In this document: in pieces, positions 1,140 to 62,830 of the stretch | Layout of the letters: every line of letters begins with the position of its first letter | Numbering within the stretch: position 1 is the first letter of the stretch | NCBI GenBank assembly: GCA_004431415.1 | Contig: QPMI01000601.1 | Span: forward strand, 186,001-250,000 | Length of the DNA: 64,000 nt | Source of the DNA: Cyanophora paradoxa CCMP329 | Lineage: Eukaryota; Plantae; Glaucophyta | Reading direction: 5' to 3' | Made by a program: the position numbers and the translations under genes | The notes under the pieces: model-generated | Seen by the model: the letters and a program-made list of their open reading frames with translations, nothing else | What the model was told of the DNA's origin: nothing | The model's database searches: none

Positions 1140-1396
1140 AGCACCGCGCGCGATGCTGACCATGACCAATCTGAAATTCGAAACGACCTCTCAGAGTCTC
1201 GACATTTTAGAAGCCCGCGGAAACAGCTGGCAGTTACGGCGCGTAGCGCCTGAAAACACGGCGAAATCTGGGTCGTTTTAGGTCGTTTTTCGCGTATACG
1301 AAAACGTACCCCCTGCTCACTACAGTGACTGAGTGAGTGGGACGCAAAAAGCTCACTCACAAAGTGAGCCCGCGGACCTCACTGGGCGCAGCCCTA
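1140..1396. mobile_element. Right end of a hAT-like element
   Basis: Ends ...CTCACTGGGCGCAGCCCTA (reverse complement TAGGGCTG..., the same start as the TSD-confirmed hAT at 61139). Multiple CTCAC/GTGAG subterminal motifs at 1316-1385. No partner end in the window. Confidence 0.55.
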
Positions 1397-30620: not shown

Positions 30621-30752
30621 GGTCGAGGGGGGTGAGGGGCGCGGCAGGATGTGGTGGGGAAGCCACCGGCACATATGCATCATCTGTCTCTCTGCTAGGC
30701 TGTTTCATTGCAGTTACACATCAATCGATATCTACAGAGTAATTACACGTAT

Positions 30753-30813
30753 GTATGGCTGCCACGGCAGCCTTGCTTACAGCAAGCTAAGCACAACATG
30801 TCTTGTCATGAAG
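30753..30813 (-). repeat. Y repeat, terminal copy (61 bp)
   Basis: GTATGGCTGCCACGGCAGCCTTGC...TCATGAAG, identical to 34572-34632. Confidence 0.95.
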
Positions 30814-31221
30814 TGAAGGTCTAGATTCGCGCTTGCCAAAGCCGCGAAGCTAAGATCATGACTCGCTCGCTCACAAGAAGGGCAAGCTGCAACTGCGCTC
30901 GAGGACATCAGCTAGCGCACGCTGCAGAGTGAGTCTTGCGGACGTAGAATGATTGAACATTAGTGATCAATTGTTGATCAATTATTCATCAAAAGATATC
31001 AATGGTTGGCACTAACAATGGCTTAAAGATGACTGAAGGCATAGTAAACAATGGGCATTGCTAACACACATTGAAAGCGGCTAAGCAAAGCCGCTCGAGC
31101 GGCTAGGGAACAAGCCGCTCAGCAAGTTACACAGCTTGCCCTCGCTTGTGAGCGAGGGAGACAAGCGCCGACAGCACAGCAAAGGCGCACAACTGCGAAG
31201 CAAGACTCTAAGACGAGACAA

Positions 31222-32222
31222 TCAACTACTGCGCCGAGTACGCGCGACTTGCTGCCGACATGACTGCAGCGAAGCTGACGGGCCAGCGTAACGAGCACCA
31301 GGCCTAGCCATGAGCGCAGCCAAGGGCGGGCGCTCAGCAGAATCGATATAGCGTCGGTAGACCGCTGACAACAAAGACCAGCGACCAACCGCTTGAACAA
31401 GCTCTTCAGGCACGCCCGCAGCAGCCAGAGCAGTAGCTCCACCGCGACGCAAGCCATGAGGTGTGATACCAGTGGCGTCCAAGCCCGCCGCGTCAAATGC
31501 GAACCGGAGAACATAGGCCACGGTCTGAGCTGACAGAGAACGAGCTGCGTCCCGAAGCTGCCCAAAAAGAGGTGCGCCCGGATCCGCGAGCGCTAGAGTC
31601 CGCAAGTAGGTTCGAAACCAGAACACCGGACAGATGACCGACTCTGGGACGGCGCCCAAGACAACTTGCGCGCCTTGGCGACGACGATCGGTCTTGGAAC
31701 CGGCAATGAAGAGCACGACGCGATCCGCGCGGATGGACACATCTTGCCGCCGGAGTGCCACGATTTCGCCACGCCGCAACAGGCCAAAGAAACCGGTAAG
31801 CAACATCACAAGGGCGCGAAGGAGCTTGTTTGAGGGGAACGAGCGTAGGTACGAGCAATCGCCTCCAGGTGGACGGACGTGACCAATGCAGATTGCTTTG
31901 CTGGTTTTCCACAAAGTCGGGCGATTCCTTGCAATGTTTGCAGCACAAGGGGGTGAGCAAATGCAGTAGTAGGCAACATCCTCTGCCTTGTCTGATGTAG
32001 CAGAGCAGAGTGACACTGGTCAATTGCTGAGAGACCGTACTCTTCATCAGCAAGAGCCACCAGCAGTGTTGCGACGCCAGAAGCTGTTGGTGGCCAGGCT
32101 GGAATGCAGTGAACCGCGCAATGGCCTTCATAGAGGACGACCCAGCGGGCGTAGAGGCTTTGGGTTCGCTCGCTCACAGAGTTTGTTCTGTAGAAAGTGA
32201 CCCGGTTGAGCAGATCAGCCAT
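31222..32222 (-). CDS. Tyrosine recombinase of the retrotransposon (1-nt frameshift at ~31835)
   Basis: N-terminal ORF 31806-32222 joins ORF 31222-32016 if one C is added in the C4 run. Catalytic LLRRGE, SKTD, HGLRRGGA, GRW and YRRY are present. Confidence 0.9.
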
Positions 32223-32377
32223 ACGAGCACCTGCATCACCAGAGTCAAGGGTATGTCAGACTACATTTCTTCTTCTTCTTTTTAAAGCCCCCACTCAAGC
32301 TTTCTATCCCTGTTGCTGGACAAAGTAAGCTGAGCAGAGATGAGCAGGAGTTGAATTCTGCAGCAAGAGCCTTCAAT

Positions 32378-34342
32378 CTACTCCCACGACACATAAAGAG
32401 CAACAAGAATCCAGGAAGGTAACTGTGCCGAGCGAGGCCCGCGATAGCACACGTCATATGCTGGGCCAAGCACCATTGCAGGTGCACGCAAGGCAAGCTG
32501 CAACTGTGGCCACCATGGAGCTGAGGGCCACTGAGGGACAATAAAAACTGCCGAGGCCCTACACTGGCGGACATGTGACACAAGGTGCAAGAGGACATTT
32601 GGGTCCGGAAAGACGTAATTACGAGCACCACGCCAGGTTGCTGTAAAGCAATCATATCCTTCAGCATGTCGATCATTCAAATCAATGGAAAAGTATCGAT
32701 TTAGGTGAGTGTTGGCTGATGAGGCCATACGATCAATATCAAAAGGTCCAAATGTCCGACTGACCATGGCAAAATACCCAGGTTTCAAAGAGTAGTCGGC
32801 GGGGTAAAAGTAGCGACTCAAAGCATCGGACCACTCATTGTCAACACCAGGAATGTGTTCTGCTTCAATGCTGATGCAATTGAGCAGAGCAATATCCCAA
32901 ATTGCTGCTGCAACTCGGCAAAGGTATTCATGTCTTCCGCCACCATTGTTGATGTAGGCCACAGTCACTGTGTTGTCCGAGCGAACTAAGATGTTCTGAT
33001 TGCGCAATAAACCTTGATAGTGCTGCATAGCGCGAAGCACTGCCATTAACTCGCGCCACGACGAAATTTGCTGAGCTTCTTCTTGGTTCCACAGGCACTG
33101 GAATGGGGCAGGCTCAAGCTCCCAAGCCACAGGTTGAGCATCACCAATTCGGGTAGTGATCCAGGCTCCTGCACCAACATGGCTTGCATCCGTAGTCAAC
33201 ACAAGGAGCCTTTCAGGCCGAATAGGGCAGCGGCCATTGTATCGGTGGATGTTGGCCAGCCACCACTCAAGTTCCCGACGAGTCTCATTGGTGAGCTCCA
33301 CTGGATGATTCCAATGCCATTCTCTTGCCACGACATTGATGTATCGAAAGAGGGACCTGGTCTTGATGCGAGCTGGAGCCAAGCCCCGTGCCATGGACAC
33401 AAGGGTGCCGGCGACCTTGGCCATTTCACGTGCAGATGCTGATTTCTTTTTCTTCAGAAGCCCTTTGATCAAAGCAAGCAGACGACCAAGCTTGTCTTGG
33501 GGTACTTCAAACAACATGCGGGCGGAGTCCACTATGAAGCCCAAGAAAGCCACCGACTGTGCTGGGGTGAGCTCAGATTTGCTGTTGACCACAAGCTTGA
33601 GGGCAGCAAATGTTTTGAGGACGAAATCCCGCAATTCACAGGCCTTCTCGTAGGTTGGAGCAGCAAACCACCAGTCGTCAACATAGTTCACCACGAAGAT
33701 GCCAAAGCGGCGGAAGTAGTTGACCACTTGTCGCATGATCTTGACGAATGCAAACGGTGAGTGCTTGAGGCCGAAGGGCAAAACTGTGTACACATAGAAT
33801 TTGCTGTCAAACTCAAAGCCCATGTTCCGCCAGTCTTGCGGTGAGACTGGCACGTGGTGGTATCCAGATTCAAGGTCAATAGTGAACATGTACCAGCCTT
33901 GGCGCAGCATGGCTGCAACATGCTCAAGAGTCTCATACTTGAAGGGGATGTCCGGAAGGCCTTTATTGGTAGGCCGGCCATCCCAGATGAGCCGCAACTT
34001 GGATCCAGTCTTCTTGGGCACCACGGACAGTGAGCAGACAATGTTCACTTGAGCTTCTTCAACTTCTCTGATCGCTCCCGTGCGCAAAAGCTTCTGAATT
34101 TCGGTTCTCACAAAGTCCTGATGGTCCACAGCCGCAGACTTGTGGTTGGCCCGGCGCTCTGCTGGCAGCCGCCTCGCTCCTGACAAAGGGAAACCACGCA
34201 AGATCCAGTTGAGCACGACATCATTGGCTCCAATCGCTCTCCACTGTTGGACTGCAGCTTGAATGCAGGATGCAACAAAGCCTCCTGCAAAGTGAGGTGA
34301 GGCCTTGCATTGGCAGACATGCCCAATTATCGCGGTGCCCAT
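32378..34342 (-). CDS. Pol: reverse transcriptase, RNase H and Dam-like methyltransferase domain
   Basis: RT: DLESGYHH, LPFGL, YVDD. RNase H: TTDAS, RELMAV, RSDN, HIPGVDNEWSDALSR. MT: DIDRMAS..N..RYFS..DCFTATW..YVFPDP..VPQWPSAPWWP. Confidence 0.95.
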   Translation of the reverse strand: MGTAIIGHVCQCKASPHFAGGFVASCIQAAVQQWRAIGANDVVLNWILRGFPLSGARRLPAERRANHKSAAVDHQDFVRTEIQKLLRTGAIREVEEAQVNIVCSLSVVPKKTGSKLRLIWDGRPTNKGLPDIPFKYETLEHVAAMLRQGWYMFTIDLESGYHHVPVSPQDWRNMGFEFDSKFYVYTVLPFGLKHSPFAFVKIMRQVVNYFRRFGIFVVNYVDDWWFAAPTYEKACELRDFVLKTFAALKLVVNSKSELTPAQSVAFLGFIVDSARMLFEVPQDKLGRLLALIKGLLKKKKSASAREMAKVAGTLVSMARGLAPARIKTRSLFRYINVVAREWHWNHPVELTNETRRELEWWLANIHRYNGRCPIRPERLLVLTTDASHVGAGAWITTRIGDAQPVAWELEPAPFQCLWNQEEAQQISSWRELMAVLRAMQHYQGLLRNQNILVRSDNTVTVAYINNGGGRHEYLCRVAAAIWDIALLNCISIEAEHIPGVDNEWSDALSRYFYPADYSLKPGYFAMVSRTFGPFDIDRMASSANTHLNRYFSIDLNDRHAEGYDCFTATWRGARNYVFPDPNVLLHLVSHVRQCRASAVFIVPQWPSAPWWPQLQLALRAPAMVLGPAYDVCYRGPRSAQLPSWILVALYVSWE

Positions 34343-34410
34343 CTAGCACTGCTACAGCTGATGGTCCATGCAGCCGCTGGCTTGAAGATGGTGACACGCG
34401 AACGGGAAGA

Positions 34411-34632
34411 AGCTTAGAGGCCTTGGCTGCGAAGCAAGACTGAGGCTTGTACCCCAGGGGCGCACTTATAACTTGTAAGTGCGCCCCTTGTACATATGTG
34501 CGTAAGCAAGGCTGCCTTTATTTGGCAGCCATACACTGCCCTATGCTACGCTGACGCTCACATAGGTTCGAGTATGGCTGCCACGGCAGCCTTGCTTACA
34601 GCAAGCTAAGCACAACATGTCTTGTCATGAAG
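34411..34632 (-). repeat. Internal Y-X junction copy lying between gag and pol
   Basis: X (34411-34574) and Y (34572-34632) overlap by GTA. Confidence 0.95.
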
Positions 34633-35364
34633 AATATAAGAGTGAGCGTGTCAATGTGCTTGTTGGTTCAAGTCTTGAGCTCACATGCACACACAGTGCC
34701 ACAATGCACCCACAGTGCCACAACACATTTGCACAGGCATGGACTTTCTGGATGAATGCGCCAACCTGCGATATCAGCGGGAACAGTTGGCATCATGGAA
34801 TCTTCGTACCCTTGTGTACTCCTCACCTGCAAAATGCACTAGGTTAATTTCAGAGCGCCCAGTATGCGATAGCGACACACGGGAAGGCCGGAGGGGGCCA
34901 GGAGCTCGACAGCCAGCAGCACTCCTGACCTGTGCTGGAAACAGGTCAGTTGCCGGGAGTCAGCTGGGGCTCTGCCAGGTTGGAGTCATCCAGACGGCAA
35001 TATATGCCACTAGCATTGAAAAGAAAAGTAGACTACAATCACAGTCACACTTCACAGTGTTAACACATGCAAATGCACACAGGACCAATGCATAAAGCCA
35101 CAGCACGCCGGCGCCACCACGGCTGGTAATGACTATGCCGCACCCGGCCACAATGCCGCACCCGGCCACATGTACACCATCACATGAAATGGAAGCATAA
35201 TACATGTATTGCATGTTTAGGGAAGCATACACGCACACTCTAGATCTTCTGAAGACTGCACTTGCATATGCTAGCAATACTTATGCTTGCAAGAACACAC
35301 CGAAACACTAGTATCTAGCGAAATGCGAAACGAAAACTGCGCGTCCACACAAGGGCGCGCACGT

Positions 35365-36453
35365 CTACTTGGGGGGGTCGCGCCAGCCGGGGCGCGGCTC
35401 GTTCGGGCAATCCTTCACGACATGCCCGGGCTTGTTGCAGCGGAAACACATCCCGCTGTTGCGCTGCGACGGCGGGCGATCGCGGCCCTGGTGCTGGGGC
35501 CGCGGGTTGGCGTGCTGCACATACGGGCGCCCGCCGGCGGCCTCCGGGCCAGCAATGTTGAGCGCGTGCGCCAGCGCCGCAGCCGTGCCCCGATACTCCT
35601 CTGGCACACCTGCCAGCCGCTCGGCAAGCTTGTCGCCGCCCTTGTCGCGAATGTCGATCCGCTTCCGGAGCTCGTCGAGGATTTTGAGGCTCTGCTTTAC
35701 GTGATCGTAGCACGCAGTGCACGAAGAGCATCTCTTGAGCTGAAACTTAAGCTGCGATAGCTGCAGGGCAAGCTCACGAAGCCACGGGTTTTTGAGCTGC
35801 ATAGCCTCATGGTTGTCTTTCTGCTGCTCGCCGAGCTGCTGCTGCTGCTGCTCTTGAAGCTTGATGACCGCGCTATCTATCCCACGCTGAAGTAGCTCAG
35901 CCCACGCTGGCGGAAGCGCACCCGCTGCCGGTTTGGTCGACGTTGGGGCAGTCGAGTTGCCAGCGGGTACAGCATAAGGGCCTTGAAGGTGACGGGTGAA
36001 GCCGGTTGACGGGCCAGCCGCGCCCGGATCCACTTGCGCCAAGTTCGGAAAGTTGCGCGCAGCCACTTGCTCTTCCTCGTCGTAGGCGCCACCGAACTGC
36101 TCACGCTGTGCCAGTCTAACGGCAACGTCGTCCTCAGGTTCATCTTCTGGGTCGGACTGCTGCTGGTCCGGATCCGGCGACACGGCTTTCTCCTTGCCTT
36201 TGCGAGATCGCGTCGGCGGAGGTGCAGGCTGCTCCTCCTCCGCACTGTCGTTGGCCGGAGCTTGAAGACGAGATGACGACCTCCGGGCCTGGGGCGCGGG
36301 GGTCGTCGCCGTCTTGGGTTTGGCCGACTTGCGCGCACCAGTGGCCGTTGACTTGCGTTTCTGCGCCGCCTCGGCACAGGCGACGAGCAGAATGATGGTC
36401 AAGACGACTACGAACAGAGGGGCCCACGATGGGCTCCTCCGCGAGCGAGCCAT
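35365..36453 (-). CDS. Gag-like protein with CCHC zinc knuckle and N-terminal hydrophobic signal-like segment
   Basis: CFRCNKPGHVVKDC near the C-terminus; coiled-coil/poly-Q middle; N-terminus MARSRRSPSWAPLFVVVLTIILLVACAEA. Confidence 0.85.
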   Translation of the reverse strand: MARSRRSPSWAPLFVVVLTIILLVACAEAAQKRKSTATGARKSAKPKTATTPAPQARRSSSRLQAPANDSAEEEQPAPPPTRSRKGKEKAVSPDPDQQQSDPEDEPEDDVAVRLAQREQFGGAYDEEEQVAARNFPNLAQVDPGAAGPSTGFTRHLQGPYAVPAGNSTAPTSTKPAAGALPPAWAELLQRGIDSAVIKLQEQQQQQLGEQQKDNHEAMQLKNPWLRELALQLSQLKFQLKRCSSCTACYDHVKQSLKILDELRKRIDIRDKGGDKLAERLAGVPEEYRGTAAALAHALNIAGPEAAGGRPYVQHANPRPQHQGRDRPPSQRNSGMCFRCNKPGHVVKDCPNEPRPGWRDPPK

Positions 36454-36459
36454 GACCTC

Positions 36460-36623
36460 AGCTTAGAGGCCTTGGCTGCGAAGCAAGACTGAGGCTTGTA
36501 CCCCAGGGGCGCACTTATAACTTGTAAGTGCGCCCCTTGTACATATGTGCGTAAGCAAGGCTGCCTTTATTTGGCAGCCATACACTGCCCTATGCTACGC
36601 TGACGCTCACATAGGTTCGAGTA
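36460..36623 (-). repeat. X repeat, terminal copy (164 bp)
   Basis: Identical to 34411-34574; contains hairpin GGGGCGCACTTA-TAACTTG-TAAGTGCGCCCC. Confidence 0.95.
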
Positions 36624-37122
36624 GTTCGCAGCTGTCACTGAGTCAAGACACCTCGAGCTTAAGCTTCAGCACACAAAAATCTTTTGCACAGAAGAAGTAC
36701 AGCGCAACTTGGCAAGTATACGTATACGTACTTCAAAACTGCACAAAGTCGTACACAAACCTTAAATCTCCGTAAGTCTCAGATCGCAAGATTCGCCTCA
36801 CTCTTACACGCAAGCACGACTCAAATCTAAGCTTACTAGTTGAGCAATCCAAATACAGTGAAACGCTTAAGCTCCGATTTGAAAACGAGAGGCCGTATAC
36901 GTATCGAGTACGATATATCGATATCTAGGTCTGAGTTCGACTTGACTTAAAAGGTGAAATAGTGAACAGGCGTTGAGTTCTACATCTGGACACGATATGT
37001 ACAATTACAATCAGTTCAAATTCTAGAAAAGCACGCGATATGTAAAGACCCTCGACGTTTCTTGCAGTGCGCTGCGGTTGCTGCAACTGCAAGTGGAGGG
37101 ACCCGGCGCGGCCGCTGGGTGG

Positions 37123-40100
37123 TCAGTGGTGGGGGGGCCGGCCCTCGTCGCCCCCCTCGCCCTCCTCGTCGTCCGAGTCGTCCCGCGCCCCAAAGTACGG
37201 CGCCTGCCCCCGGCGTTAAGGGAAGGAAGAAGACGTGGGGCGGGGCGGGGCGGGCGGACGAAGAAGGGGTCGTCGGTGGCAACCTCGGGGGGCACGGTGG
37301 AGAGGAGCTGCCCGAGGCGCCCCGACTCGCGCTTGAGGTGCAGCAGCATCGGCCGGAACAGCAGCAGCGAGACCGCCGCCAGCAGGCCCAGGTGCGCCGC
37401 TGCGACCCGCCCCGAAGTCAGCGGCCCTGCTTCCCTTCCTCGCCTCCAAGGCTCAAAGCTTAAGCAAGGCGCCCAGAACTTCTTGGGCGCGCACCGAGGA
37501 AGGCGACCTGGGCGGTGGCGACGGCCGCGAGGCGGTCCATCTGCCCCGGCCCCGCCGCGTCAGACTCCGATCGCGGGGGGCGGGGGCGGGGGCGGGGGCG
37601 GGGGCGGGGGCGGGGGGCGCGAGGGGCGCACGTGCTCCTGGAAGTAGAGGTTGATCGCCCGCTGCGTCCCTGCGGGGGCGGGCGGCCTCGGGGTCAGGGA
37701 CCCGCAGAGGCGAGCTGGAGGGGGTTACCGCTGCGGGCGCCGCACCGTCGAAGAAGTCTCCGATGGCGGGGGACGTCGACTCGACGAGGAACGCCAGCGC
37801 CCGCGAGCGCGCGCCGAGCGCCCCCGCCGAGTACGCCCCGGGGGGGAGCTCCCGCGCCCGCAGGCCGTGGTAGCCCCGCAGGGGCGCCCCGGGCTCCGCG
37901 CTGGGGGCCGCCAGCGCCGCCTCCGGGATGCGGTTGGGGTAGCCGTCGTACCTGTGTGCACGCCGGCAGGCGGCCTGAGCAGAGTGAACAGAAAGGAGAT
38001 GAAGGGCCAGCCGCACCGGCAGGCCTCGGAGTGGAGGAGGTCGAGGCAGGGGCTGGCGCGCACCGCCTCGGCGGGGGGCGCGTAGCCCGGGGCGCCGTAC
38101 CAGAACTCCTGCAGCAGCCGCTCCGCGCTCTCCAGGAAGAAGTAGACCAGCGAGTCGAAGCCCTGCGCGGGGTGAGGGGCCGGCCGGAGGGAGGGGGGCG
38201 GGAGGGAGGGGGGGTACCTGGGTGATGCGGGCCGGCTCGACGCTGCGGTTGGGGACCCCGCACGCCGTCTGGTTGAGGAGGAGGCACCCCGGCTTGTACA
38301 GCAGCTCCTCCATCGGCGGGTACCTGCCGCCCAGCATTAGAGTCGAAACAGCAAAGGAAGAAATGAAGAGGGGACCGGAGGGAGGAGCCCGGGAGGCGGA
38401 AGGCGGGGTCCCCGAACTTCAAACCCTCGTGCACGCGCCGGCAGAAGCGCGCCGTGGAGGCGAGCAGGGGGCCCAGCAGCGCCCTCGGCAGCAGCGCCCC
38501 GTCGTCCAGCACCAGCTCCCGCGCCAAGAAGGAGACCTGGGGCGGCTCGGAGGGGGCGGGGGGGAGGGGCGCGGGAGCGGGAGGGGCGCACCATGCGGGA
38601 GGAGAAGCGGCGGCGCCCGCCCGACTCTGCGCGCGGCGGGCTCGCCGGGGGCGAGGGCGAGGGGAAGCGGGGGGGCGGGGGGAGGGGGGGCTCGAGGGGC
38701 GCACGGATCTCGGAGGAGATGTACTTGCCGGAGTTGATGGCAAGGTACATCGTCAGGAAGTTCGCCAGCGCGCTGCGGGGCGGAGGGCGAGGGGTCAAGG
38801 AGGGGCAGGAGGGGCGCGGGGGAGAGGGCCGCGCGCACATGACGGCGACGAGGGTGAAGGCGAGGGCGAAGCGCGCCGCGAAGCGCCGCAGGATCCCCGC
38901 CCGGCCCCGCCCCGGCCCCGCCCCCGCCCCCGGGCCGGCCCTCTGCTCCCGCTCGGCGGCCTCGTCCCGGGGGCCGGCGGGGGCGGCGGGGGCGGCGTGG
39001 GGGACGGTGAACTGCTGCGCGAAGGGCGAGAAGGCGATCGAGCGGCCGCGGTGCTGCAAGCCGCCCGCCTCCTCCTCGGGCTTCAGCTTCGGGCCGCCGC
39101 CGCCGCCGGCCCGAACGAGCAGGTCCTCGCCCGAGGGCGGCGCCGGGTGCACGGCGGCGGCGGCGGCGGCGCTGGCGCCCGAGAGGAGGCGCCGCCCGCC
39201 CCGCACGCTCCCCTCCCACGAGGGAGCACCACGGGCTGTGCCCCGCCCTTGCCCTCCCCGGGCCCCGCCTTGGCGGCGGGGAAGCTCCCGGCGCTGGCGA
39301 TGAGCATGTGGACGAAGGCCGCGTCGTCATCCTCATCGCCGCCCCGCTCCTTGGCGCCCTTGGCGGGGGCCGGCGCCCCCCGGGGCGAGCCGCCGCGGGA
39401 CGAGCCCGAGGCCGGCACGAGGGGCCCGAGCCGGCGCCCGAGCCCGAGGCGCCCGAGCCGAACGAGCCCCGCCCCGCGCCCCGCTCCGTGCCCTGCCCCG
39501 GGGCGCCCGTCAGCGGCGGGAGCGCCGCTGCGGCGGCGTCGGCGCCGGCGCCCCGCACCGCGTCGAGGATGAGGCCCGGGGCGCCGGCGGGGCCCTGGGG
39601 CGGGATGGCGATCGCGACCACCGAGTCGCGCCCCGCGCCGGCCCCGCCCTCCTCCTCCTCGTCGTCGTCGTCGTTGTCGGGGCCGAGGGCGAGGGCGGCG
39701 GGGGCGGCGGGGGCGTGGACGCTCCCGCCCGCCTCCGCCTCGCGGTCCGTGAACGTGCCGGCCTCCGAGTCGAGGTCGAAGACGCGCGAGCCGGCCACCG
39801 CCGCCCTCCCGGGCGGCCTGCGCCGCGCCTTGCCCTTCGGCTCCTCCTCCTCCATTTCCTCCGCCGCGGCGAGCTCCGCATCGGACGAGGCGGCCGAGGC
39901 CGACCCGCGGCGCCCCGCGCGGCCCCGGCCCCGGCCCCGCGCCCGCAGCCGCGCCCTCCCGCCAGCGCCCTCGAGCTCCGCCTCGAGGCTCTCGCGGCGG
40001 GCGAGGGTGACGTCCATGCCGGCCCCGGCGCCGGCCTCCTCCGCCTCCTCCTCGTCGGGCATGGAGAGGGGCACCTCGGAGGGGCGCCGGTCCAGGGCGC

Positions 40101-45776: not shown

Positions 45777-48700
45777 ATGGAGGAAGCGCACGCCGTCGAT
45801 TCCGGACCCTCCTCGCACGCTGTCGAGCTGGAATACTTGCCAGGTTTGCGCGCCGAGCGCTGGATGCGCGACATCGGCTGCCCCGCGGCACATTCGCGCC
45901 TTTCTCTGATCGAAAACGCCCGCAGACGATGTGCTCATCGCAATCTTGTCGATCCTGGCGAAGGGCGGGGCGCGAAACCTCGCGCCGGTCGCGTCCGTGA
46001 GCAAGAGGCTGCACTCGTTGTGCGGGGCGCCCGCGCTGTGGGAGGCTCCCACCTTTCTGCACTCTGATCCGCCCGCGTACTTCGTCGCTGCGTGCAAGCG
46101 CTTCGGGCGGCACTTCCGCCGCCTTTGCATCAGCGGGCTTGCCCACCTGTCGGGGCCTGACGCTTCCAAGGGACTCTCGTACTGCACGAATCTTTCGCAC
46201 CTCAACATCTCGAGCTTCCTCGGCGTGAAGGTTCGCCCTCTAGATGATCATGCGCGCTAGCTCCATGGAATTTGAATTTGAATCCGTCGCAGAAAGGGGT
46301 GCGCTTCGACGATGACACGCATATGCAGGAGATGTGGACGATGTGCCCGACTCTCAGTATCCATCCCCTGCCGTACGTTTGGAAGCGCCTCCCTCGGATG
46401 CCAGTGCGTACGCGCATGCGGCCATGGCCACAGTCAGCGGAGTCTTGTATAGATAGGCTTCAAGGCTTGAGCCTTGCATAATTATAATCTGATGTGTTTG
46501 ATACACGTGGGCTCGCAGAACCTGGTCCACCTGAACGCTTCGGACGTCGCCATCACGGCCGGTTGCCTCGCCTCGGCGCTCAAGTCCTGCGGCGACAAGC
46601 TCACGAAGCTGTATTTGAAGTAAATAAGCTTTCATAACTCGTTTCTGCGGCCCGTTGCTCCGGCTGACCTTTTTCACAGCAATACGTTCATTTTTCATCC
46701 ATCGGCTGGATGGTTCCAGAGGCGCCCTGTTGGCACGACGCCCTGTGCCCAGCACAACTTCCCGAGCCTTGTGCCAGCATCCAAGCCTTGCACATGCGTG
46801 CACGCGGCGAGCATCCTGCATGCCTTCGCCGGCGTTGAGTGCGTGCGATCAGTTGTGAGCTCAGCGCTAGCTGCAGAGTCTTACCTCATAGATACAGGCT
46901 GCCACGACTCGAGGAGCTCGATCTCTCTCGCACGATCTGCGACGAGCAGAACCTGTTAGCTTTCCTTGCGAGCCTACCTTCCCTCCGGGAGCTCTTTCTC
47001 GTGCGCTCCCAGATTTAGAGATCGAAGTCGCCGATCTAGAAACGATCGCAAAAGTTGTCTGCACAGGTAAAGCCAAGGCAGGAGCCGGAGCCGCCACCGA
47101 TCGCGAGCTGGTCGTGGGAACATTCCTGGAAAAATCAGCGCAATTTGGATCACTGGTGCATGTGATTTTATCCTCAGCCCCTTCTAGATTTCCGTAACCC
47201 GCTAGCGCTCGCTCATCGACTAGTACTCCGGGAGCGCAGGAGCGGAAAGAACCTGGCGAATGCTCTGCAGGCCAGAGGCGTCTCCGTGATTCGCAAAGAT
47301 TTCCTCAATCTGGTCTGCCGTTCCGAATATTAATGGCTTGCTGCCCCGCGCCATTAAGCCGGTCGCGATCCCCCCAGATGAAGAAAATGATCGACGCGAT
47401 TTCCCTAGGCTCGAACTTCGAAGCGATCCATGCGAAAGTATGCAATTCTTTGCGCATTTTGATTCTCTGTTCCGCTCACTCCGGCCCCGTGTGCCTCAGG
47501 CTATCGCGCTGCTGCCGGTCGTCCGGCGGTGCGCAGGCATCGATGCTCGCCTCCAAGACGGATCGACCCTCTTCCTGGCCGCAATGTATTCGGGGGTGCC
47601 CCCCCCCCCCCCCCCCCCCCTCTTTGCGGAGCTATATATCCCTTGGACCCCTTGCCGGGCCTTGCGGCCAGACCGACACGCGCTTGGCATGCGCGCAGCA
47701 CTTTGCGGCGGCGCAGCGCCTCGTGGAGGAATTCGGGGCTGACCCACTCGCCCGATGCCGGCCGGCCTACTTCCGCGGCCAGGATGATCCCTGGGTGCGC
47801 CCTATAGCTAGTCTATTCCCTCGAATCCGCCTCCCGCGTCCCTCAAGCTGCCCTGCAGACTCCACCCTACCCAGCCTCGAGCTCTGCGATCACGACCGCG
47901 GAGATCGCTAATTTCCTGGATGATGATATCCAAGCATTCGGTAGGCCGCTCTTTACCACGCCCTTCCCGCTCGTGATATGTTTCTGCAGCGCAGGGTGAA
48001 GCTCCGGGCATCACGATCAAGCCAGGCGCATCGGTTCTGCACCTTTTCGCCCTATCTTCATATGCATGGTGCGCAACTCGCCAAGAGCACGCAATTGCGA
48101 TACTAGGACGGACTGTGCCGCGGCCGCAGTGGCATTCGGGCTGCGGCAGACTGCGAGGCAGTGGACAAAGCGCTCATTTCCCAGCTACCCGAGGTGATTA
48201 AGCTTCGAAAATTCGTACATGCGCCTCCACCAGTACTTAAGCATCCGCACAGATGCTCCGGAACTGGGGCGCTGCCCGCGTCGTCAACGAGCCCTCCTGG
48301 GATGCCCACCATGCTCCCCCTATGAACGCCTTCTTCGAGTCGGAGCAAGCCCACCCGATTTTTTGGAATCTCCTTTCCAGTCGATGCCCTGCCCTAACTA
48401 ACGCGCACGTGCCCTTGCTTCTTTCAGAGCGCCATCTACATATACCTGGGGCGAATCCGAAGAAGCTCCTTTCGCAGAATCGATCTGCCCGCACGCCCTG
48501 CTTCTGGAGCTGGGCGCCGACCAGTCGCTCACTGATGCACGCGGGCGGACTGTGCTGCACGCCGCCGCCTCGAGCTCGTCGACGTCGGGGCGCGCCGACA
48601 CCGTGCGAAGGATCCTCGCGGCCCTCCCCGACATCATCAACGCCCGAGGTCCCCACCCGCAGCAATCGATTCAAGCTCGCGTCTCCCCTAGGCCTCCAAT

Positions 48701-51700
48701 TGTTACTTACGTCCCCGGCCGCAGACGTCGACGGCTGCACGGCGCTCCTTCTCGCCATACGCCGCTTCGGCGCTTTTGGTACCAGTGCTTTCTGGTACTA
48801 GCGCTCATCATACTATGTACGCACCCGCAGGAAATCCCGATGGCGACCTGGAGTTAATCCGAGCCATCCTGGAGCAGGAGAACCCCCGGGCCGACGCGAC
48901 GATAGCCGCTTTCAATGCGCGCGGCTTCTCGCCCCTTCACGAAGCCGCTGGTCGCAAGCTGGGCGACCCCGCCTCGAAATGTTCGCCGCTGGGCGCCCCC
49001 TCCCCCGGCCCATCATCTCTCTCTCCTGAGATGCGTTCCTCAGGGCGAGGCGACGATCCCAAGCGAGCCAAGCTCGTGGAGCTCCTACTGGGTGCCCTGG
49101 CCACCCGCATGCGCGCTTGCGCGTATTCCATTGCAACTTGAGTGTACCGCCCGGCCCGCAGCGCGCCCCGAGGTCGACGTGAACGCGATGGATGAGGAGG
49201 GGCGCACGCCGCTTTATGTTGCAGCGTTCTCTGGCGGCGTCAAGACCGTCGAAGTGCGTCATCTGCCAGTGTCGGTATCTTTCTCGGCCTGAAGCGTCAT
49301 GCTTTATCCCGCAGGCGCTGCTCGCGGCTCCGGGCGTCGACGTGAATGCAGGCCGCCGCGGCGCGACGCCGCTCTATGGCGCCTGCATGCTCCACAACGT
49401 CGATGCCGTCCGCGGGCGAGCTGCGGCGGCGCCTTCGTTTCCTCGCGCTTCCTGAGCGCTCGCGTTGCAGGCTGCTGGAAGCGGGCGCCGACCCATCCGC
49501 GCGCCCGCCGGGGCACGTTTCCCCCATCATGCGTCTTTTCAAGGAGCTCGAGGTTAGTGAATATAAAATACATCTAATTGTTTTTAGCGATTTCAATGCA
49601 TTCGAATGCTTTGCGGGCAGATTGCACCCGCGACCTCAACAGGCCGACTTCGACCCTGCGCCCAAGTGGACGATGGCTACCTAATCGACAAGAGCCGTCT
49701 CATGTATGAATCGAGAGTTCTTTCGCGCTCCATCCTCGTGCGTGCTCTCCTTCCGACCCCCCGCCCCCCCCCCATCTTTCACTCCCTTCCCCCCCCCTTT
49801 CACTCCCTCCTCCCCTTCCCTCCCCCCCCCCCCCCCCCCCCTTCCCCCTTCCCGACACCCCTTTCGTGCGAGTTTCTCTCTAATCACGAGCCTTTCGTGA
49901 TCACAGAAAGACATGCGTCAACTTTTCAAGTCCAAGGGCGCAGTCATCGAGCGCGCTGGTGTGTGTGGGGCCATTTATTCGATACATCAATCCTATCTTA
50001 ATCTTCAGGCGTCTTGACGTCCGTCTTCCAGACACGAACGGCAAGTCGGCCCTGCACCTCGCTGCCGCCCTTCAGGTGTGACGCGCGCCTTTGAATTCGC
50101 CCCCGCTGATCATGAAATGCGAGCGTGGGCGTGCGCAGGGCCCCGATCCCTTCGCCGCCCTGGAGGAGGAGGAGGACGACATTGCTGCCCGTAACGCCCG
50201 GGACCCGACGGGCGCGCCGCCGCCGCCGCCTCGGCCCAGCTTCCATCGATATCGCTGATTATAACCCGCGGGCAGGGCGGACGCCGCTGATGGCGGCGTG
50301 CGAGGCGGGCCACCTCGACGCCGTGTACGCCTTCGTCAACTTCTCCGACCCGTTGCTGGCCGTGCGGGCAGAGCCCCCCCAATTTTCCTCTTCTCTTGAG
50401 ATCGCGATCAGGACGTGGACGGGAACACGGCCCTGCACGTAGCCCTGGGGCCCTCGGGCGCGGGCAAGGCCGACCGCATCAAGATCGCCTCGCTGCTCGC
50501 CCGCGCCCACGGCCGCACCCAGGCCCGAACCCTCGCGCTGCGCCCTCCAGCAGGTGCGCCGCGCTCACTCGCGAAGCAGGCGGCCAAGGCGCGGAACCTG
50601 GAGGGCCGCACGCCCCTCCATATTCTCGCTGCCTCCGCGTGCGTCTCGCTCGGCCCGCCCCACCCCGCCCCTCCTCGCAGCCGCCCCGGCCCTCAGCGCG
50701 CCGGCAGCTGGCGGGAGGGCGTCGCGTACGGGAGGCTCGGCGCCGTCCTGGCCCCCCACTCGGACCTGACCGCTCGCGACCTGCTCGGCCGCACCCCGGT
50801 GCCTTGGTCTCCTCTGAAACTCCGCGCTCGCGAGCGATCCTGATCGCGGGCGGGCGCGTGCAGCTCCACATCCTGGGGCGCCTCTCCGGCAGGGAGCTGC
50901 ACGTCGCTCCGTCGGTGTCGGCGGCGGGCCGGGTCGCGGACCCGACGCTCATCGTCCTGCGATCGCTCCTCCAGCACCCGCAGGTCTGCATGCCCTGGAA
51001 GCAGTTGGCTTCACTTTGACGTGAAGCAGGCCAAGGAAGCGCTGGCCGTCACGGACAACGAGGGGTGCACGCCCCTGCACCACGCTGCCCGCGGGGGAAA
51101 CGCGGAGGTGAGTGAGTTGCCACAGCTATCGGTTTGCAATCTTCAGTTGCAGGCCTCGAGTTCTGAGTCGACGCAGGCGGTGGAGTGGATGCTGCAGGCG
51201 GGGGCGCCGGCTGCCTCTGCGCGGGAGCGCGAGGGGCGCACGGCGTCCGAGGTCGCCCCGCCCGCCACCCGCGCCCTCATCCACCGTCCGCGCTCCCGCT
51301 CTTAGCTTCCCGTTCGGAGAACGCCGTTTGATTTCCTTTCAGGGTTCCTCGAGACGGGGGAGATGGAGGGGGCCCCAAGCAGCGGCAGCGGCGGCGGCGC
51401 CGGCGGGCGCGGGCGCAAGCGGGCGCAGCGGTCCGAGGCGGAGGCCCCGACCGCGGGCGAGCGCGAGGAGGGCGGAGCGGAGGCCGAGGCGGAGCCTGCG
51501 GGGCAGCCGGCGCGCGCGGCCAAGGCGAAGCCTGCTCCCGCTGCGGTTCGCGGATTCCTCTTCCTCTCGAGCTTTCGCAGGCCAAAGCAGCAGCGCCTAT
51601 CTGACGGAAGCGCAGCGGCGGGGTCGGCGGCAAGCAGCGGCCGTTGCCGCGGGCGAATCGGACGTCTCAGACTTCGAGGAGGGCGGAGCGGGGCCGGCGG

Positions 51701-59179: not shown

Positions 59180-60022
59180 GCCCCGCCGCGCTCTAGATCT
59201 CTCTCTGCGTCTTTTCATTCTCACGCACCACCAAGTCGTTTTGTTGCCCCGCCGCGCCGCCGCGCCGGAGTCGCGGCCACGCTGACAAGCTTAAGCGCGC
59301 GAGTCCCTGCGGAGCAGGAGTGGCCTGGAGTTGATTTATAAATTTAAACGTGATCATCGGATACTAGTAGTGGCCAGTGGGGGTTCTTTTTCTAGGTCTT
59401 CGACTCGCGCTCGCCCCCCGCTCGTCTCAGGATGTGCAAGGTGGGGTCTAAATAATAGAGACAGCATCTAGATCTGCAGCTGCAGCTAACTTAGTAACGC
59501 TCGATCTCGCAGCAGGACAGATTTAGACAATCCGACGGGTAGCAAGGGGGGATATTAAAAGCAGCTGATTATTTAAAATTTGAATGCAATTTTGAGCCCT
59601 GGATATACCCGACCATCCCTCCTGCCGTGGCCCAGCTGCAGTGGGGGGGGCCGTGTCTTAACGATAGAGTACTGTGGGGCCGAGAGGCCTCATCCCTCCT
59701 GGCCATGGAACCCTAGGCCTGGATATAGTAACAGTAGTACAATGAACTATAGTACCTTTTCACCACAGTACCAGGCCAGGCTGGGAAATTGCAACTCGGC
59801 GGCCGACGCTTACCTTTTGCTGCCAAATTTGACATTTGGGACCTGCGAACTACGGCTGGTCTGAGCTTGGAGAAGCAAAAAAATGCCACTGGAAACCTTG
59901 CCCAATGGTATATTTGTCCATTTCATTTGTTGAGTAGTAAAAAAACATTCGGTTCCAGCCCGCATAGTACTGTGGTTTCGTGTACCCATGGGACCCTTTC
60001 GCTGGCGGAAAACGCCAATCGT

Positions 60023-60196
60023 TTACTACAGCGAGTCGAGTCAAAAAGCTTCAGTCTGAAACTCGGGCGATTTCGTGATTGGTCAATTTAAATCAAATTG
60101 GCTGGGTATGTCATAATTGCTTACTACGGCGAGTCGAGTCAAAAAGCCCCATGCAGTCGGAAACTCGAGCGATTTCGTGATTGGTCAATTTAAATC
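60023..60196. repeat. Imperfect ~72-bp direct duplication (60023-60094, 60121-60196)
   Basis: TTACTAC.GCGAGTCGAGTCAAAAAGC...GAAACTCG.GCGATTTCGTGATTGGTCAATTTAAATC occurs twice. Confidence 0.85.
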
Positions 60197-60219
60197 GATG
60201 GACTTATATATATATAGCT

Positions 60220-60510
60220 CACAGCTCGTTTTTTTTTAACCGGTCGACCCAAGTTCACCCAACACGGCTGAAAACCGGTTAAAATGAAATCGCTCTTCGG
60301 CTACATATGCATGGGTTGGCTGGGAACGCGGGCGCCGGCTAGCCCGGCTAGCACTTATCTACCCGGAAGCTTGCCGGCTACACGCTGACGTTGGCGCACT
60401 AGCCGGCTCGAAGCGGGTGAAAAGTTATCGCGATCGCCGGCTGCCCTAGGCCTTGCCCATACGTATACAACGGGCATGTCGAGTCGATTGGGAAAACAAA
60501 ACGAGCTGTG
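60220..60510. mobile_element. 291-bp MITE, CACTA/EnSpm-like termini
   Basis: TIR CACAGCTCGTTTT...AAAACGAGCTGTG (17/18 match), flanked by CT on both sides (2-bp TSD). Confidence 0.6.
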
Positions 60511-61138
60511 CTGTACGGTCTGTACCCAGCTAGCAAGCGGGGGGGGTGCGGGGGGGGCGGAGCCCCCCCTGCTTGTACTAGTAGACGTCGACCTCGAGGC
60601 TCGAGCACCGCGGCCGATGGCGCGATCGATATCGCGAGGCCTCCGAGTCTTCGAGCTCTAAACTTTTTTTTTGAAACCGCCGGGCCGTCGCCGGGCGACG
60701 CCGGCCCGGCCCGGCCCGTGACTCAACTTCACTCAAGGGCCGACAGAATCCGCAAGCTTAATTCAATGGCTAGTAAAAGCTCTACATGCTTGCATTCGAG
60801 CGTCATAGCAGCATGCAATCCATGGCTATGGCGATCGTAGAGCTAGCGGTCGCGATCGTGGAGTTGCTTCCAGGACTATGGGCCCATACAACGCCGTACC
60901 GCAGTGTCAGTGGTAATGCACTCGAAAAACGATTCTTATGCTCAGAGTTCGGACTTTCCAGAGAGCATTTGGGAGGAAAGGGGGGCCAGGGCGGGCCTTG
61001 TCGGCCCTTGTGCGGCGAAGTTGTGCCGCGCGCCTTGCGCTGCAGCCTGCCAGCCTGGCAGGCTGCAGGCCCTGAGGCCGCTCACGCTACGAGTTTTTTG
61101 GACCGGCGGATCTTCGCGCCATACAAACCGGATCCGAG

Positions 61139-62028
61139 TAGGGCTGTCGTCAGTCACTGACAGTCACAGTCAGAGGGTCTGACTGACCTCACTGGGTCAG
61201 CTTTTGGCTGACTGACGTTTTCTCAGTCCCATACAACACCCTGCTGGGAGCGTGCCCCCCTGCGGGCTTTTTCCATCTAAAGCTGACGTGGGTCGACCAA
61301 AAAATGATCTTCTGTCGTCGAAATCTTCAAAAGACCGCCCATGTGCATGGTAAGAGGCTAATGGAGTCTGACGTGCGCCTGGCGGGGGCCGAATCTCCTT
61401 TTCTCGTCCTTTCTGCTCGCATAACGTGCCTGGCCTGATGCTTGGCAACTTGAATGAAGTAGATAGATCGCGCTTGGGTCAATTCCTGCCAATTTCCTGG
61501 TCATTTTTCCCGGCTTTTGCACGGTAGCCTGACTAGGGTTGGTGAATTTCATGAAATTCAAAAATTTGGCGTTGAAACTGAAAGTCGACCCTTTGAAAGC
61601 TTTGAAAATTCAATTGAAATTTCAATCCGCAGTGCAGCACTTGCAGAGACCCTACGCACTTCGGAGAGTCTCTTTCACTCTAGATTGTCTCTAATCGACT
61701 TCAGTCTCACTCTCTGAGTCTCTTTACGGACTGGGAGGGCTCCTGGGAAGGCTGGAGGGGCTGGGATTCCTGGGAAGGGGGAGCTGCAACGAGGGTGCGA
61801 AAACGGCGAAATTCAATATATTTTATTATTTTTATATTCTATTTCAATGCAATTTCAACGGGCGGCGTTGAAATTGAAATTGAATTTTCAATTTCAATGC
61901 AATTTCAATGGCTTGAAATTTCAAGCTGCCAACCCTAAGCCTGACTGAACCTCGGGTTGACTGATTCAGTCACAGTCAGGGGGGCTGACGGACTGGGTCA
62001 GCCGGGGGACTGACTGACGACAGCACTA
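61139..62028. mobile_element. Non-autonomous hAT element
   Basis: TIR TAGGGCTGTCGTCAGTC / GACTGACGACAGCACTA, 8-bp TSD GATCCGAG (61131-61138, 62029-62036), CAGTC/GACTG subterminal repeats. Confidence 0.92.
61534..61937. mobile_element. Nested non-autonomous hAT element (404 bp)
   Basis: TIR TAGGGTTGG / CCAACCCTA, 8-bp TSD AGCCTGAC (61526-61533, 61938-61945), TTGAAATT subterminal repeats. Confidence 0.92.
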
Positions 62029-62570
62029 GATCCGAGTCAAGTTGATTGACTAAACTCGGCCGAGTTGCTAGACTCGTCCCGGTGTCCGAGTCAAATTAGT
62101 ACGGGCCGGTCCCGAGTCTAGCAACTCGGTGAAGATCTGATTGGACACTGAAGATCTTCGAAGATCTCCCGGAAAACTATTTGATTGGCCAGCCTTGATT
62201 TGATATATACCTAGACTCGATATTCGTTGATGTATAATAATATAGCACGCGGAATATACCAGAGCACTGACTGCCATTCGGCATACTAGGAGCATACTCG
62301 GTACCGGACAGAATCTGCCAGCTCGAGGCCAGGCCCAGTCAGCCGTTACTAACCGACAATGCCAGCGCCTGTGGGGCCCGCCGAGTTCTTGCGAAGATTT
62401 GGACCCCCAAAGAACTCGTAGCGTCAGAATCCTCAGATTGCGAGTTCCAGTGGCTGGCAGTTTTTTCCCGGCCCGGGGGCGCGCCGACGCGGCGCGGTTG
62501 CTGCCGCAGTGCTCGAGCTAGGCTGCTGCCTGCAGCTGCAGCTGCAGCCTGCAGGCTGCAGCAGCTACTA

Positions 62571-62684
62571 CCGTGTAACACTATATTATGACGGTCAAAT
62601 TATGTCGTTATAAAACTGGACCCTTCTCTTGGTGAAATATGACGGTCCCAAATTATGTCGTCATGAAATTTTCAGGCTTGTCGA
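62571..62684. mobile_element. Possible left end of a Tc1/pogo-like element
   Basis: TA|CCGTG start and an internal direct repeat ATGACGGTC(CC)AAATTATGTCGT x2; interrupted at 62685. No partner end seen. Confidence 0.35.
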
Positions 62685-62830
62685 TAGGGCTCCGGCCCGG
62701 GTCCTAAAACCTGGACCCGCGACCCGCGGGTCGGGTCGACCCCCTGACCCGTGACCCACGGGTCCGACCCGGGTCGCTGGGGGGGGTACCGGTTGCGCCG
62801 AAAAACCGCTAAAAAAACACGGGTTCGCTT
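62685..62830. mobile_element. Left end of another hAT-like element (extends rightwards)
   Basis: Starts TAGGGCT with dense GACCC/GGGTC subterminal motifs. The right TIR (expected TSD CTTGTCGA) is not in the window. Confidence 0.55.

What the first reader, a model, noticed from the sequence alone, without database searches (positions are those of the whole stretch)
30753..36623. YR retrotransposon built as two modules with identical ends: X-gag-Y | X-pol-YR-Y
Seen: in coding orientation the order is X, gag, Y-X, RT/RH/MT, YR, Y. The repeats are 100% identical; gag starts 7 nt after the first X and pol ~70 nt after the second X; GTA is shared at both ends and at the internal junction (empty site ..CGTAT-GTA-GTTCG..). 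Known: PAT/Ngaro elements have split direct repeats A1..B1A2..B2 and integrate circles via YR; as I recall, the internal B1A2 normally lies downstream of gag-pol. Inferred: here the circle-junction template also acts as terminator and promoter, making gag and pol separate transcription units. Each half (2.05 kb and 3.8 kb) has complete ends, so the element could behave as a segmented/bipartite retroelement, or be permuted or tandemly amplified by its own recombinase.
Basis: partly seen in the sequence, partly recalled or inferred. Interest (0 to 1): 0.85.

Follow-up and report, generated by a model that had tools for sequence, protein, structure and literature searches.

The report
Split-repeat DIRS retrotransposon, junction between gag and pol
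This is a young tyrosine-recombinase (PAT-like DIRS) retrotransposon of the alga Cyanophora paradoxa whose internal "circle-junction" repeat lies between gag and pol instead of at the 3' end: a real and inherited layout variant of a known element type, not a new kind of element.

Summary
A 5,871-bp element on the minus strand (30753-36623) reads X(164 nt)-gag-Y(61 nt)·X-pol(RT/RNase H/Dam-like MT)-YR-Y. Both repeat pairs are 100% identical. They are the only direct repeats of 60 nt or more in the 64-kb window. One trinucleotide (TAC in coding sense) is shared at both ends and at the Y·X junction.

The host is Cyanophora paradoxa. Its proteome holds at least 19 near-identical gag gene models, and two of them are numbered next to a pol fragment.

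The element fits the split-direct-repeat (A1...B1A2...B2) PAT-like DIRS type. What is unusual is the position of B1A2. Five relatives at 33-41% pol identity have gag abutting pol. The window's own clade (47-79%) has a non-coding leader upstream of pol, and short-read contigs break exactly at the X-like and Y-like borders. The layout is therefore inherited, not a one-off.

Published work already places the internal repeats between MT and YR in nematode Pat1 and kangaroo, and says "other configurations exist". I found no description of the gag|pol position.

Separate transcription units and bipartite behaviour remain untested inference. The YR reading frame is broken in this copy.

The parts
36460..36623 (-). 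X1 (= A1), the 164-nt 5' terminal repeat. Its first three bases, TAC (36623-36621), are the shared trinucleotide. It contains a 33-nt palindrome with a TATAA-like loop.
   Evidence: 100% identical to 34411-34574.
35365..36453 (-). gag ORF, 362 aa, with a CCHC zinc knuckle at residues 336-351. GC3 is 0.73.
   Evidence: One search gives the ORF. One search gives zf-CCHC at E 1.3e-05; the exact sequence is in the Cyanophora paradoxa EukProt cluster. One search gives GC3.
34633..35364 (-). Non-coding tail of the gag module, 732 nt and 51% GC.
   Evidence: No ORF there has family support.
34572..34632 (-). Y1 (= B1), the 61-nt internal copy of the 3' terminal repeat. It contains a TGTAA motif and two short palindromes.
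   Evidence: 100% identical to 30753-30813. Sequence read.
34411..34574 (-). X2 (= A2), the internal copy of X. It overlaps Y1 by the trinucleotide 34572-34574. Y1 and X2 together are the circle-junction copy and fold as one long hairpin.
   Evidence: One search gives the repeat; the 222-nt junction folds at dG -63.1 kcal/mol, z -8.1, with 0 of 200 shuffles as stable.
34343..34410 (-). 68-nt leader between X2 and the pol ATG. It contains a 5-codon upstream ORF.
   Evidence: Read directly.
32378..34342 (-). pol ORF, 654 aa. RT is at about 34015-33530, RNase H at about 33220-32813, and the Dam-like MT at about 32773-32504. GC3 is 0.55.
   Evidence: RVT_1 at 1.3e-18 and RT_RNaseH at 8.6e-05. Dam PF05869 at E 7.6e-4, below the Pfam cut-off. 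BLASTP 3e-27 to the Dam-bearing C-terminus of P0082.
31854..32222 (-). YR N-terminal piece. It starts with its own ATG, 155 nt after the pol stop.
   Evidence: aligns to residues 1-121 of the L004 YR and 4-129 of the L005 YR, in one frame.
31839..31854 (-). Frame break inside the YR. The reading frame changes here, whereas relatives are uninterrupted. It is either a defect of this copy or a long-read indel error.
   Evidence: the two tblastn segments lie in different frames and leave 14 nt between them.
31222..31839 (-). YR catalytic piece. The motifs LLRRGE, HGLRRGG, GRW and YRRY are visible.
   Evidence: Phage_integrase at 1.4e-11; 47% identity to the L005 YR.
30814..31221 (-). Non-coding tail of the pol-YR module, 408 nt.
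30753..30813 (-). Y2 (= B2), the 61-nt 3' terminal repeat. It ends with the shared trinucleotide (30755-30753 in coding sense).

Best explanation
This is one PAT-like (split-direct-repeat) DIRS retrotransposon of Cyanophora paradoxa, 5,871 bp long, inserted recently into an AT-rich stretch downstream of a host gene.

Its layout is A1-gag-B1A2-pol(RT/RH/MT)-YR-B2. The internal Y·X (B1A2) is the copy of the circle junction. DIRS-type elements need this copy to rebuild complete ends from a transcript that starts inside X1 and ends inside Y2. That job does not depend on where the junction sits inside the transcript, so the element can work with the junction between gag and pol.

Integration is by the YR across the shared TAC. 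This leaves one TAC at each end and no target duplication.

Shown here: the anatomy, the domain content, that this is a young multi-copy family, and that the layout is inherited within a clade. Inferred: the replication route, by analogy with DIRS-1 and the Goodwin-Poulter model.

Also inferred: because each coding block is now preceded by a full X and followed by a full Y, the internal X and Y probably give a short gag mRNA and a subgenomic pol-YR mRNA. That would replace the ORF overlap that relatives use to couple gag and pol. A read-through RNA from X1 to Y2 would be the replication template.

This particular copy may be non-autonomous, because its YR frame is interrupted.
For: Anatomy:
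- Repeat pairs are 100% identical with sharp borders and a 3-nt overlap.
- Domains are gag-CCHC, RT, RNase H, Dam-like MT and YR.
- The Y·X junction forms a strong hairpin (z -8.1). The B1·A2 junction of a standard-layout relative, L001, does the same (z -5.0).
- L001 shows the usual order A1-gag-pol-YR-B1A2-B2, with a 2-nt overlap at the junction.

Young multi-copy family:
- Gag models at 95-100% identity carry at least 19 Cyanophora accessions.
- Gag models numbered immediately before 99-100% identical pol fragments occur on two other contigs.

Inherited layout:
- Pol of the window, P0001, P0002, P0003 and L091 forms a clade with SH-aLRT 100.
- In that clade pol is preceded by a non-coding leader, not by gag.
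- The k=31 Logan contig L091 holds only leader-pol-YR-tail. It stops exactly 30 nt after the CTTCATG motif that starts Y in the window. L091 and L004 also start at the same homologous position.
- Relatives outside the clade have gag abutting or overlapping pol.

Literature:
- The ICR is essential for DIRS-1 retrotransposition, and the junction trinucleotide defines integration (PMC7192593).
- The position of the internal repeats varies in the PAT group (PMC4157794; PMC8969392).

Motifs compatible with expression from X:
- A TATAA-like loop lies about 55 nt before the end of X, and no ATG lies between it and the gag ATG.
Against: - No transcript, circle or genome-wide copy data could be reached, so promoter and terminator roles for the internal X and Y are untested. 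Cyanophora promoter and poly(A) signals are not known to me (one search found nothing).
- Only one full copy was seen. The other Cyanophora copies are known only through gene-model numbering, which gives adjacency but neither strand nor repeats.
- The relatives' layout is inferred from where assembly contigs end, not from complete elements. No X-like or Y-like sequence homology beyond a 13-nt motif was found.
- The YR frame is broken in this copy.
- Gag GC3 (0.73) differs from pol GC3 (0.55). This could mean that the two modules have different histories.
Confidence: 0.7

Rival explanations
1. A truly bipartite pair. A gag-only element (X-gag-Y) and a gag-less element (X-pol-YR-Y) share ends. 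They circularise and integrate separately, and here they sit in tandem because the YR joined one circle to the end of the other, or resolved and re-fused a two-junction circle.
For: - Each block has complete, identical ends and a single shared TAC at the joint.
- Two directly repeated Y·X sites on one circle are a natural substrate for resolution by a tyrosine recombinase (inference).
- Gag GC3 is 0.73 against 0.55 for pol.
- Gag gene models (at least 19 accessions) far outnumber pol models (2). A gag fragment (g7811) also sits next to a full gag (g7812) on tig00001254.
- The contig evidence from L091 and L004 fits this reading equally well.
Against: - A solo module has no internal junction copy, and that copy is essential in DIRS-1 (PMC7192593).
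- Gag sits next to pol at two further loci.
- The excess of gag models can be an annotation bias. Augustus trained on a GC-rich host favours the GC-rich gag over the 52%-GC pol.
- No solo module was actually seen.
Confidence: 0.17
2. A one-off rearrangement or assembly artefact at this locus. For example, ectopic recombination between two standard copies, or a long-read mis-join, could have placed a junction copy between gag and pol.
For: Only one complete copy was examined. The assembly is PacBio-based (PMC6704402). The YR frame break could itself be a consensus error.
Against: - Borders are exact, and both repeat pairs are perfect.
- The same gag-pol adjacency occurs on two other contigs.
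- The sister lineage from other samples shows repeat borders at the homologous places on both sides of pol-YR, and the group is monophyletic.
- Gag and pol are separated by about 1 kb with no trace of the ORF overlap seen in standard relatives.
Confidence: 0.05
3. A permuted insertion of an element whose canonical order is X-pol-YR-Y·X-gag-Y. The circle carries two equivalent junctions, so either can be used for integration and both orders should exist.
For: This follows from the circle model with two Y·X sites (inference). Gene numbering in the two other loci gives gag before pol but no strand, so either order is possible there.
Against: It does not change what the element is. In both orders gag and pol are separated by a junction. 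There are no data on the frequency of either order.
Confidence: 0.08

Closest known systems
Nematode-form Pat1 (Panagrellus/Caenorhabditis/Pristionchus) and kangaroo (Volvox carteri), PAT group of DIRS elements
   Same: They share split direct repeats A1...B1A2...B2, RT/RNase H followed by an MT domain, and a YR. The internal repeats lie inside the coding region, so one ORF sits in its own repeat-bounded block (PMC4157794). Pat1 gag also has a zinc finger, as here.
   Different: In those elements the junction lies between MT and YR, so the YR is the separate block. Here it lies between gag and pol, so gag is the separate block. Kangaroo also has an inverted YR and no zinc finger. Membership by RT phylogeny with named references was not tested.
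Standard-layout PAT-like/Ngaro/VIPER elements (A1-internal-B1A2-B2), e.g. relative L001 found here, TOC-type elements of Chlamydomonas
   Same: They share the same kinds of repeat, a junction overlap of 2-3 nt, a hairpin spanning the junction, and three ORFs in the order gag, pol, YR.
   Different: There the junction copy lies 3' of the YR with a short non-coding tail, and gag abuts or overlaps pol. Ngaro and VIPER lack the MT domain that is present here.
DIRS-1 of Dictyostelium
   Same: It has a YR, RT/RH/MT and an internal copy of the joined termini (the ICR), which is experimentally essential. A trinucleotide at the circle junction is proposed to define integration (PMC7192593).
   Different: DIRS-1 has inverted terminal repeats and an ICR complementary to both ends. 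Here the repeats are direct.

Membership tests
PAT-like (split-direct-repeat) DIRS retrotransposons | Split direct repeats: A1 at the 5' end, B1A2 internal, B2 at the 3' end, with A1=A2 and B1=B2 | tested here: met
   the 164-nt and 61-nt pairs are both 100% identical and adjoin at 34572-34574.
PAT-like (split-direct-repeat) DIRS retrotransposons | Reverse transcriptase plus RNase H of the DIRS/Ty3-related type in one pol ORF | tested here: met
   RVT_1 at 1.3e-18, with RT_RNaseH weak; thousands of homologues with the same length and domain order.
PAT-like (split-direct-repeat) DIRS retrotransposons | Methyltransferase (Dam-like) domain after RNase H, which separates DIRS/PAT from Ngaro/VIPER | tested here: met
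   PF05869 at E 7.6e-4, 19.6 bits, below Pfam's 28.1 cut-off. BLASTP 3e-27 to the C-terminus of P0082, which passes the cut-off (39.8 bits).
PAT-like (split-direct-repeat) DIRS retrotransposons | Tyrosine recombinase instead of a DDE integrase, and no protease | tested here: met
   Phage_integrase at 1.4e-11, with no rve or protease hit in the ORFs scanned. R, HxxR and Y motifs are present, but the ORF is frame-broken in this copy.
PAT-like (split-direct-repeat) DIRS retrotransposons | No target-site duplication beyond the trinucleotide shared with the circle junction | tested here: met
   TAC at both ends and once at Y·X, and the flanks are otherwise unrelated.
PAT-like (split-direct-repeat) DIRS retrotransposons | RT/RH groups with named PAT references (Pat1, kangaroo, TOC3) in a phylogeny | not tested
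   No named reference sequences were available. The tree holds only anonymous relatives.
PAT-like (split-direct-repeat) DIRS retrotransposons | Replication through an extrachromosomal cDNA whose ends are restored on the internal junction | not testable with these tools
   This needs cDNA, circle or retrotransposition assays.
DIRS1-like elements | Inverted terminal repeats plus an internal complementary region | tested here: not met
   the terminal repeats are direct. Only part of Y is complementary to an inner stretch of X (I4).
Ngaro / VIPER | Split direct repeats but no MT domain | tested here: not met
   An MT-like domain is present.
LTR retrotransposons | The same long repeat at both ends, a DDE integrase, and a 4-6 bp target duplication | tested here: not met
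   X is absent from the 3' end and Y from the 5' end. There is no integrase and no duplication.

The most novel reading that the evidence does not exclude
The element is a truly bipartite retroelement. The gag module and the pol-YR module are transcribed from their own X copies. The element's own recombinase can split them from the two-junction circle, and they integrate and amplify separately, so gag modules behave as a satellite of pol-YR modules and their copy numbers are uncoupled.
Probability: 0.15. Interest if true: 0.75.

Novelty: new variant of a known kind. Interest (0 to 1): 0.45.

Why it matters
DIRS-type elements are the least understood retrotransposons. Only DIRS-1 has been tested at the bench, and the role of split direct repeats rests on a model.

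A family in which the junction copy separates gag from pol is a natural experiment in three ways. First, it shows that the junction's position within the element can vary. Second, it offers a way to set the gag:pol ratio by separate transcripts rather than by ORF overlap. Third, it gives a circle with two equivalent recombination sites, which predicts permuted copies and sub-circles that can be looked for directly.

To my knowledge it also adds glaucophytes to the hosts of PAT-like elements. I found no paper reporting DIRS elements in Cyanophora, and the genome paper does not annotate them.

If the layout is merely a positional variant with one transcript, the interest is limited to TE annotation.

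Tried and rejected
- Phage database search with the whole element: no match, as expected.
- Rfam and tRNA scans of the window: nothing found.
- Look-up of the short 'gag cluster' member P0074: it returned unrelated bacterial contigs L006 and L007, a spurious low-complexity cluster member.
- Metagenome scan with a pol alignment: only relatives at 31% identity or less, and the three full-length ones (L008-L010) contain no repeats at all, so they do not bear on the layout.
- YR protein search: no Cyanophora gene models, so the gag/pol/YR order in other copies could not be read from gene numbering.
- Alignment of X with the regions upstream of pol in L004 and L005: no homology.
- Window gag against relatives' gag regions: only the zinc knuckle matches.
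- The original PAT (de Chastonay 1992) and kangaroo (Duncan 2002) papers are not held. Their layouts are cited second-hand from PMC4157794.
- Search for glaucophyte poly(A) signals: nothing found. The TGTAA in Y and the AATAAA and TATAA in X are therefore noted but not used as evidence.
- Pfam on long ORFs from other parts of the window: no hits.
- The careful tree did not finish, so the quick tree is cited.
- The YR was never read through its frame break. Its two pieces were searched apart by reference.
- An intron as the cause of the YR break was rejected, because relatives have only 5-6 residues across the 14-nt gap.
Full report
On the + strand a 164-nt sequence occurs at 34411-34574 and 36460-36623. 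A 61-nt sequence occurs at 30753-30813 and 34572-34632. Both pairs are 100% identical. They are the only direct repeats of 60 nt or more in the 64-kb window, so chance is not an issue. No further X or Y copy lies in the window.

The coding strand is the minus strand. In coding sense the order is:
- X (36623-36460);
- a 362-aa gag ORF whose ATG is the seventh base after X, with a CCHC zinc knuckle;
- 732 nt of non-coding sequence;
- Y (34632-34572) overlapping the second X (34574-34411) by three bases;
- a 68-nt leader;
- a 654-aa pol ORF with RT and RNase H and a C-terminal Dam-like methyltransferase region. Pfam E is 7.6e-4, below the cut-off, but BLASTP gives 3e-27 to the Dam-bearing end of a relative;
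- a 155-nt spacer;
- a tyrosine recombinase (Phage_integrase 1.4e-11);
- 408 nt of non-coding sequence;
- the second Y (30813-30753).

TAC (GTA on the + strand) begins X1, ends Y2, and is present once at the Y·X joint. The flanks share nothing else.

The YR is in two frames. Compared with the uninterrupted YR ORFs of relatives L004 and L005, the window aligns in one frame up to 31854 and in another from 31839. Only 14 nt lie between the two segments, where the relatives have 5-6 codons. This is a frame break, not an intron. The assembly is PacBio-based (PMC6704402), so a consensus indel cannot be excluded. Otherwise this copy depends on recombinase from other copies. The catalytic motifs downstream are intact. 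I searched the two pieces apart and did not join them.

**3. Host and copy number.** The gag ORF is found exactly in EukProt's Cyanophora paradoxa proteome. Its 90% cluster holds eleven EukProt sequences under at least 19 accessions, at 85-100% identity to the window. A second gag family at 47% identity has six models. The host DNA around the element is 70-80% GC and the element is 45-65% GC. The element sits in an AT-rich stretch just downstream of a GC-rich ORF that ends near 37125.

Pol appears in the annotation only as two 125-aa RT fragments that are 99-100% identical to the window. Each is numbered directly after a gag model on its contig: P010053/P010054, and g16766/g16767 on tig00020961. 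Gag therefore lies next to pol at two or more other loci, and the family is young and multi-copy. No paper I could find reports DIRS elements in Cyanophora.

**4. What kind of element it is.** Direct split repeats, RT/RH/MT, a YR, no integrase or protease, and a junction trinucleotide add up to the PAT-like (split-direct-repeat) branch of the DIRS order. The trinucleotide shared by junction and termini is a described DIRS signature (PMC7192593).

The Y·X junction folds into a long hairpin (dG -63 kcal/mol, z -8.1), because the end of Y is complementary to an inner stretch of X. A relative with the ordinary layout, L001, has the same design at its B1·A2 junction (z -5.0). L001 reads A1-gag-pol-YR-B1A2-B2, with a 2-nt overlap at the junction. 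The window's junction is thus an ordinary junction in an unusual place.

**5. Is the place unusual, and is it inherited?** Outside the window's clade, gag abuts or overlaps pol in every relative I could read: L001 (33%), L002 (39-41%), L088 (38%), L089 (37%) and L090 (35%).

The window's pol groups with P0001 (79%), P0002/L004, P0003/L005 and L091 (about 50%) in a clade with SH-aLRT 100. This clade is nested among the standard relatives (quick tree). In L004, L005 and L091 pol is preceded by a non-coding leader with stops in all frames, and no gag.

The short-read contigs are telling. L091 was assembled by Logan with k=31. It holds a 107-nt leader, a 654-aa pol, a 334-aa YR and a 496-nt tail, 3,650 nt in all. 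The window has 3,597 nt between X2 and Y2. L091 stops exactly 30 nt (k-1) after CTTCATG, the motif that begins Y in the window, and it is preceded by the same CCTTCA context as Y2. L091 and the 73%-identical L004 start within 2 nt of the same homologous position, while the k=141 contig L005 runs about 140 nt further upstream. That is the pattern expected if a repeat ends just upstream of pol and another begins after the YR tail.

I take this as good, though indirect, evidence that the [repeat]-pol-YR-[repeat] block is a trait of the clade and not an accident of this locus. X itself is not alignable between the lineages.

**6. Comparison with the literature.**
- Szitenberg et al. (PMC4157794) describe the internal repeats of nematode-form Pat1 and of kangaroo as lying between MT and YR. 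They describe a different placement in the echinoderm form, and a placement downstream of YR in Ngaro. They score 'translocation of the internal repeats' as a character.
- Goubert et al. (PMC8969392) state that A1-internal-B1-A2-B2 is the commonest layout, 'although other configurations exist'.

The general fact that a junction copy can cut the coding region into repeat-bounded blocks is therefore known. I found no description of a junction between gag and pol. However, I could not read de Chastonay 1992, Duncan 2002, Goodwin and Poulter 2001/2004 or Repbase. I therefore rate the novelty as a new variant of a known kind, with that caveat.

**7. How it most likely works.**
- Established by analogy: DIRS-1 needs its internal junction copy to complete retrotransposition from a transcript that lacks the outer ends (PMC7192593).
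- Inferred here: a read-through RNA from within X1 to within Y2 carries one complete Y·X. The ends of the cDNA are completed on this copy. The YR then recombines the junction TAC with a target TAC.
- Consequence of the layout: about 1 kb with many stops and ATGs separates gag from pol, so pol can hardly be translated from the full-length RNA in the way that overlapping ORFs allow in relatives. A subgenomic pol-YR RNA from X2, and a short gag RNA ending in Y1, are the simplest solution.
- Compatible sequence features: a TATAA-like loop lies about 55 nt before the end of X. No ATG lies between it and the gag ATG. Only a 5-codon upstream ORF precedes pol. TGTAA lies 30 nt before the end of Y.
- None of this is tested, and Cyanophora signals are unknown to me.

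**8. Rivals.**
- A truly bipartite pair of elements cannot be excluded. Each block has full ends. A circle with two direct Y·X sites is a natural substrate for resolution. Gag GC3 (0.73) differs from pol GC3 (0.55). Gag models outnumber pol models, and a gag fragment sits next to a full gag on tig00001254. Against it: a solo block has no junction copy, the gag excess may be a gene-finder bias toward GC-rich ORFs, and no solo block was seen.
- A one-off rearrangement or mis-assembly is unlikely, given sections 3 and 5.
- A permuted order (pol-YR first) may coexist and is a prediction rather than a rival.

**9. Verdict.** The finding is a real, well-delimited PAT-like DIRS element with a clade-specific relocation of the circle-junction copy to the gag/pol boundary, in a host group where such elements had apparently not been described. 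It is interesting to transposon specialists and easy to test further, but it is not a new class.

Noticed in passing
window 31839-31854: The YR reading frame is interrupted in this otherwise pristine copy, whose repeats are 100% identical. It is either a long-read consensus indel or a copy that depends on recombinase supplied in trans.
   Followed up: partly
window 35365-36453 versus 32378-34342: Gag has a GC3 of 0.73, while pol has 0.55 and the YR 0.52-0.58. The two modules differ in composition, and gag is closer to the GC-rich host.
   Followed up: partly
window 36624-37130 and 30690-30752: The element sits in an AT-rich island (41-45% GC) directly after a GC-rich minus-strand ORF that ends near 37125. 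The island carries several TACGTATAC-like motifs near the insertion point.
   Followed up: no
window 1-2000, 46000-50000, 60000-64000: There are other stretches of lower GC (45-62%) in a 70-80% GC background. Long ORFs from 17-853 and elsewhere have no Pfam hit. Whether these stretches are other mobile elements was not resolved.
   Followed up: partly
EukProt Cyanophora models tig00001254_g7811, g7812, g7821: One contig carries a 128-aa gag fragment, a full gag at 99.7% identity numbered next to it, and a gag of the second family (47% identity) nine genes further on. This suggests clustered or nested insertions.
   Followed up: no
L008-L010 (metagenome contigs of 6.3-6.7 kb): These PAT-like pol-YR elements at 31% identity have about 1.1 kb upstream of pol with no ORF of 120 aa or more, and no internal repeats at all. 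Where their gag lies is unclear.
   Followed up: partly
L006, L007: Short proteins of 40-48 aa placed in the gag 90% cluster come from unrelated bacterial contigs next to a Peptidase_M24 gene. They are clustering artefacts, not gag copies.
   Followed up: yes
window 35120-35200 and 34690-34730 (gag 3' tail): Short tandem duplications of about 19-20 nt lie in the non-coding tail of the gag module.
   Followed up: no
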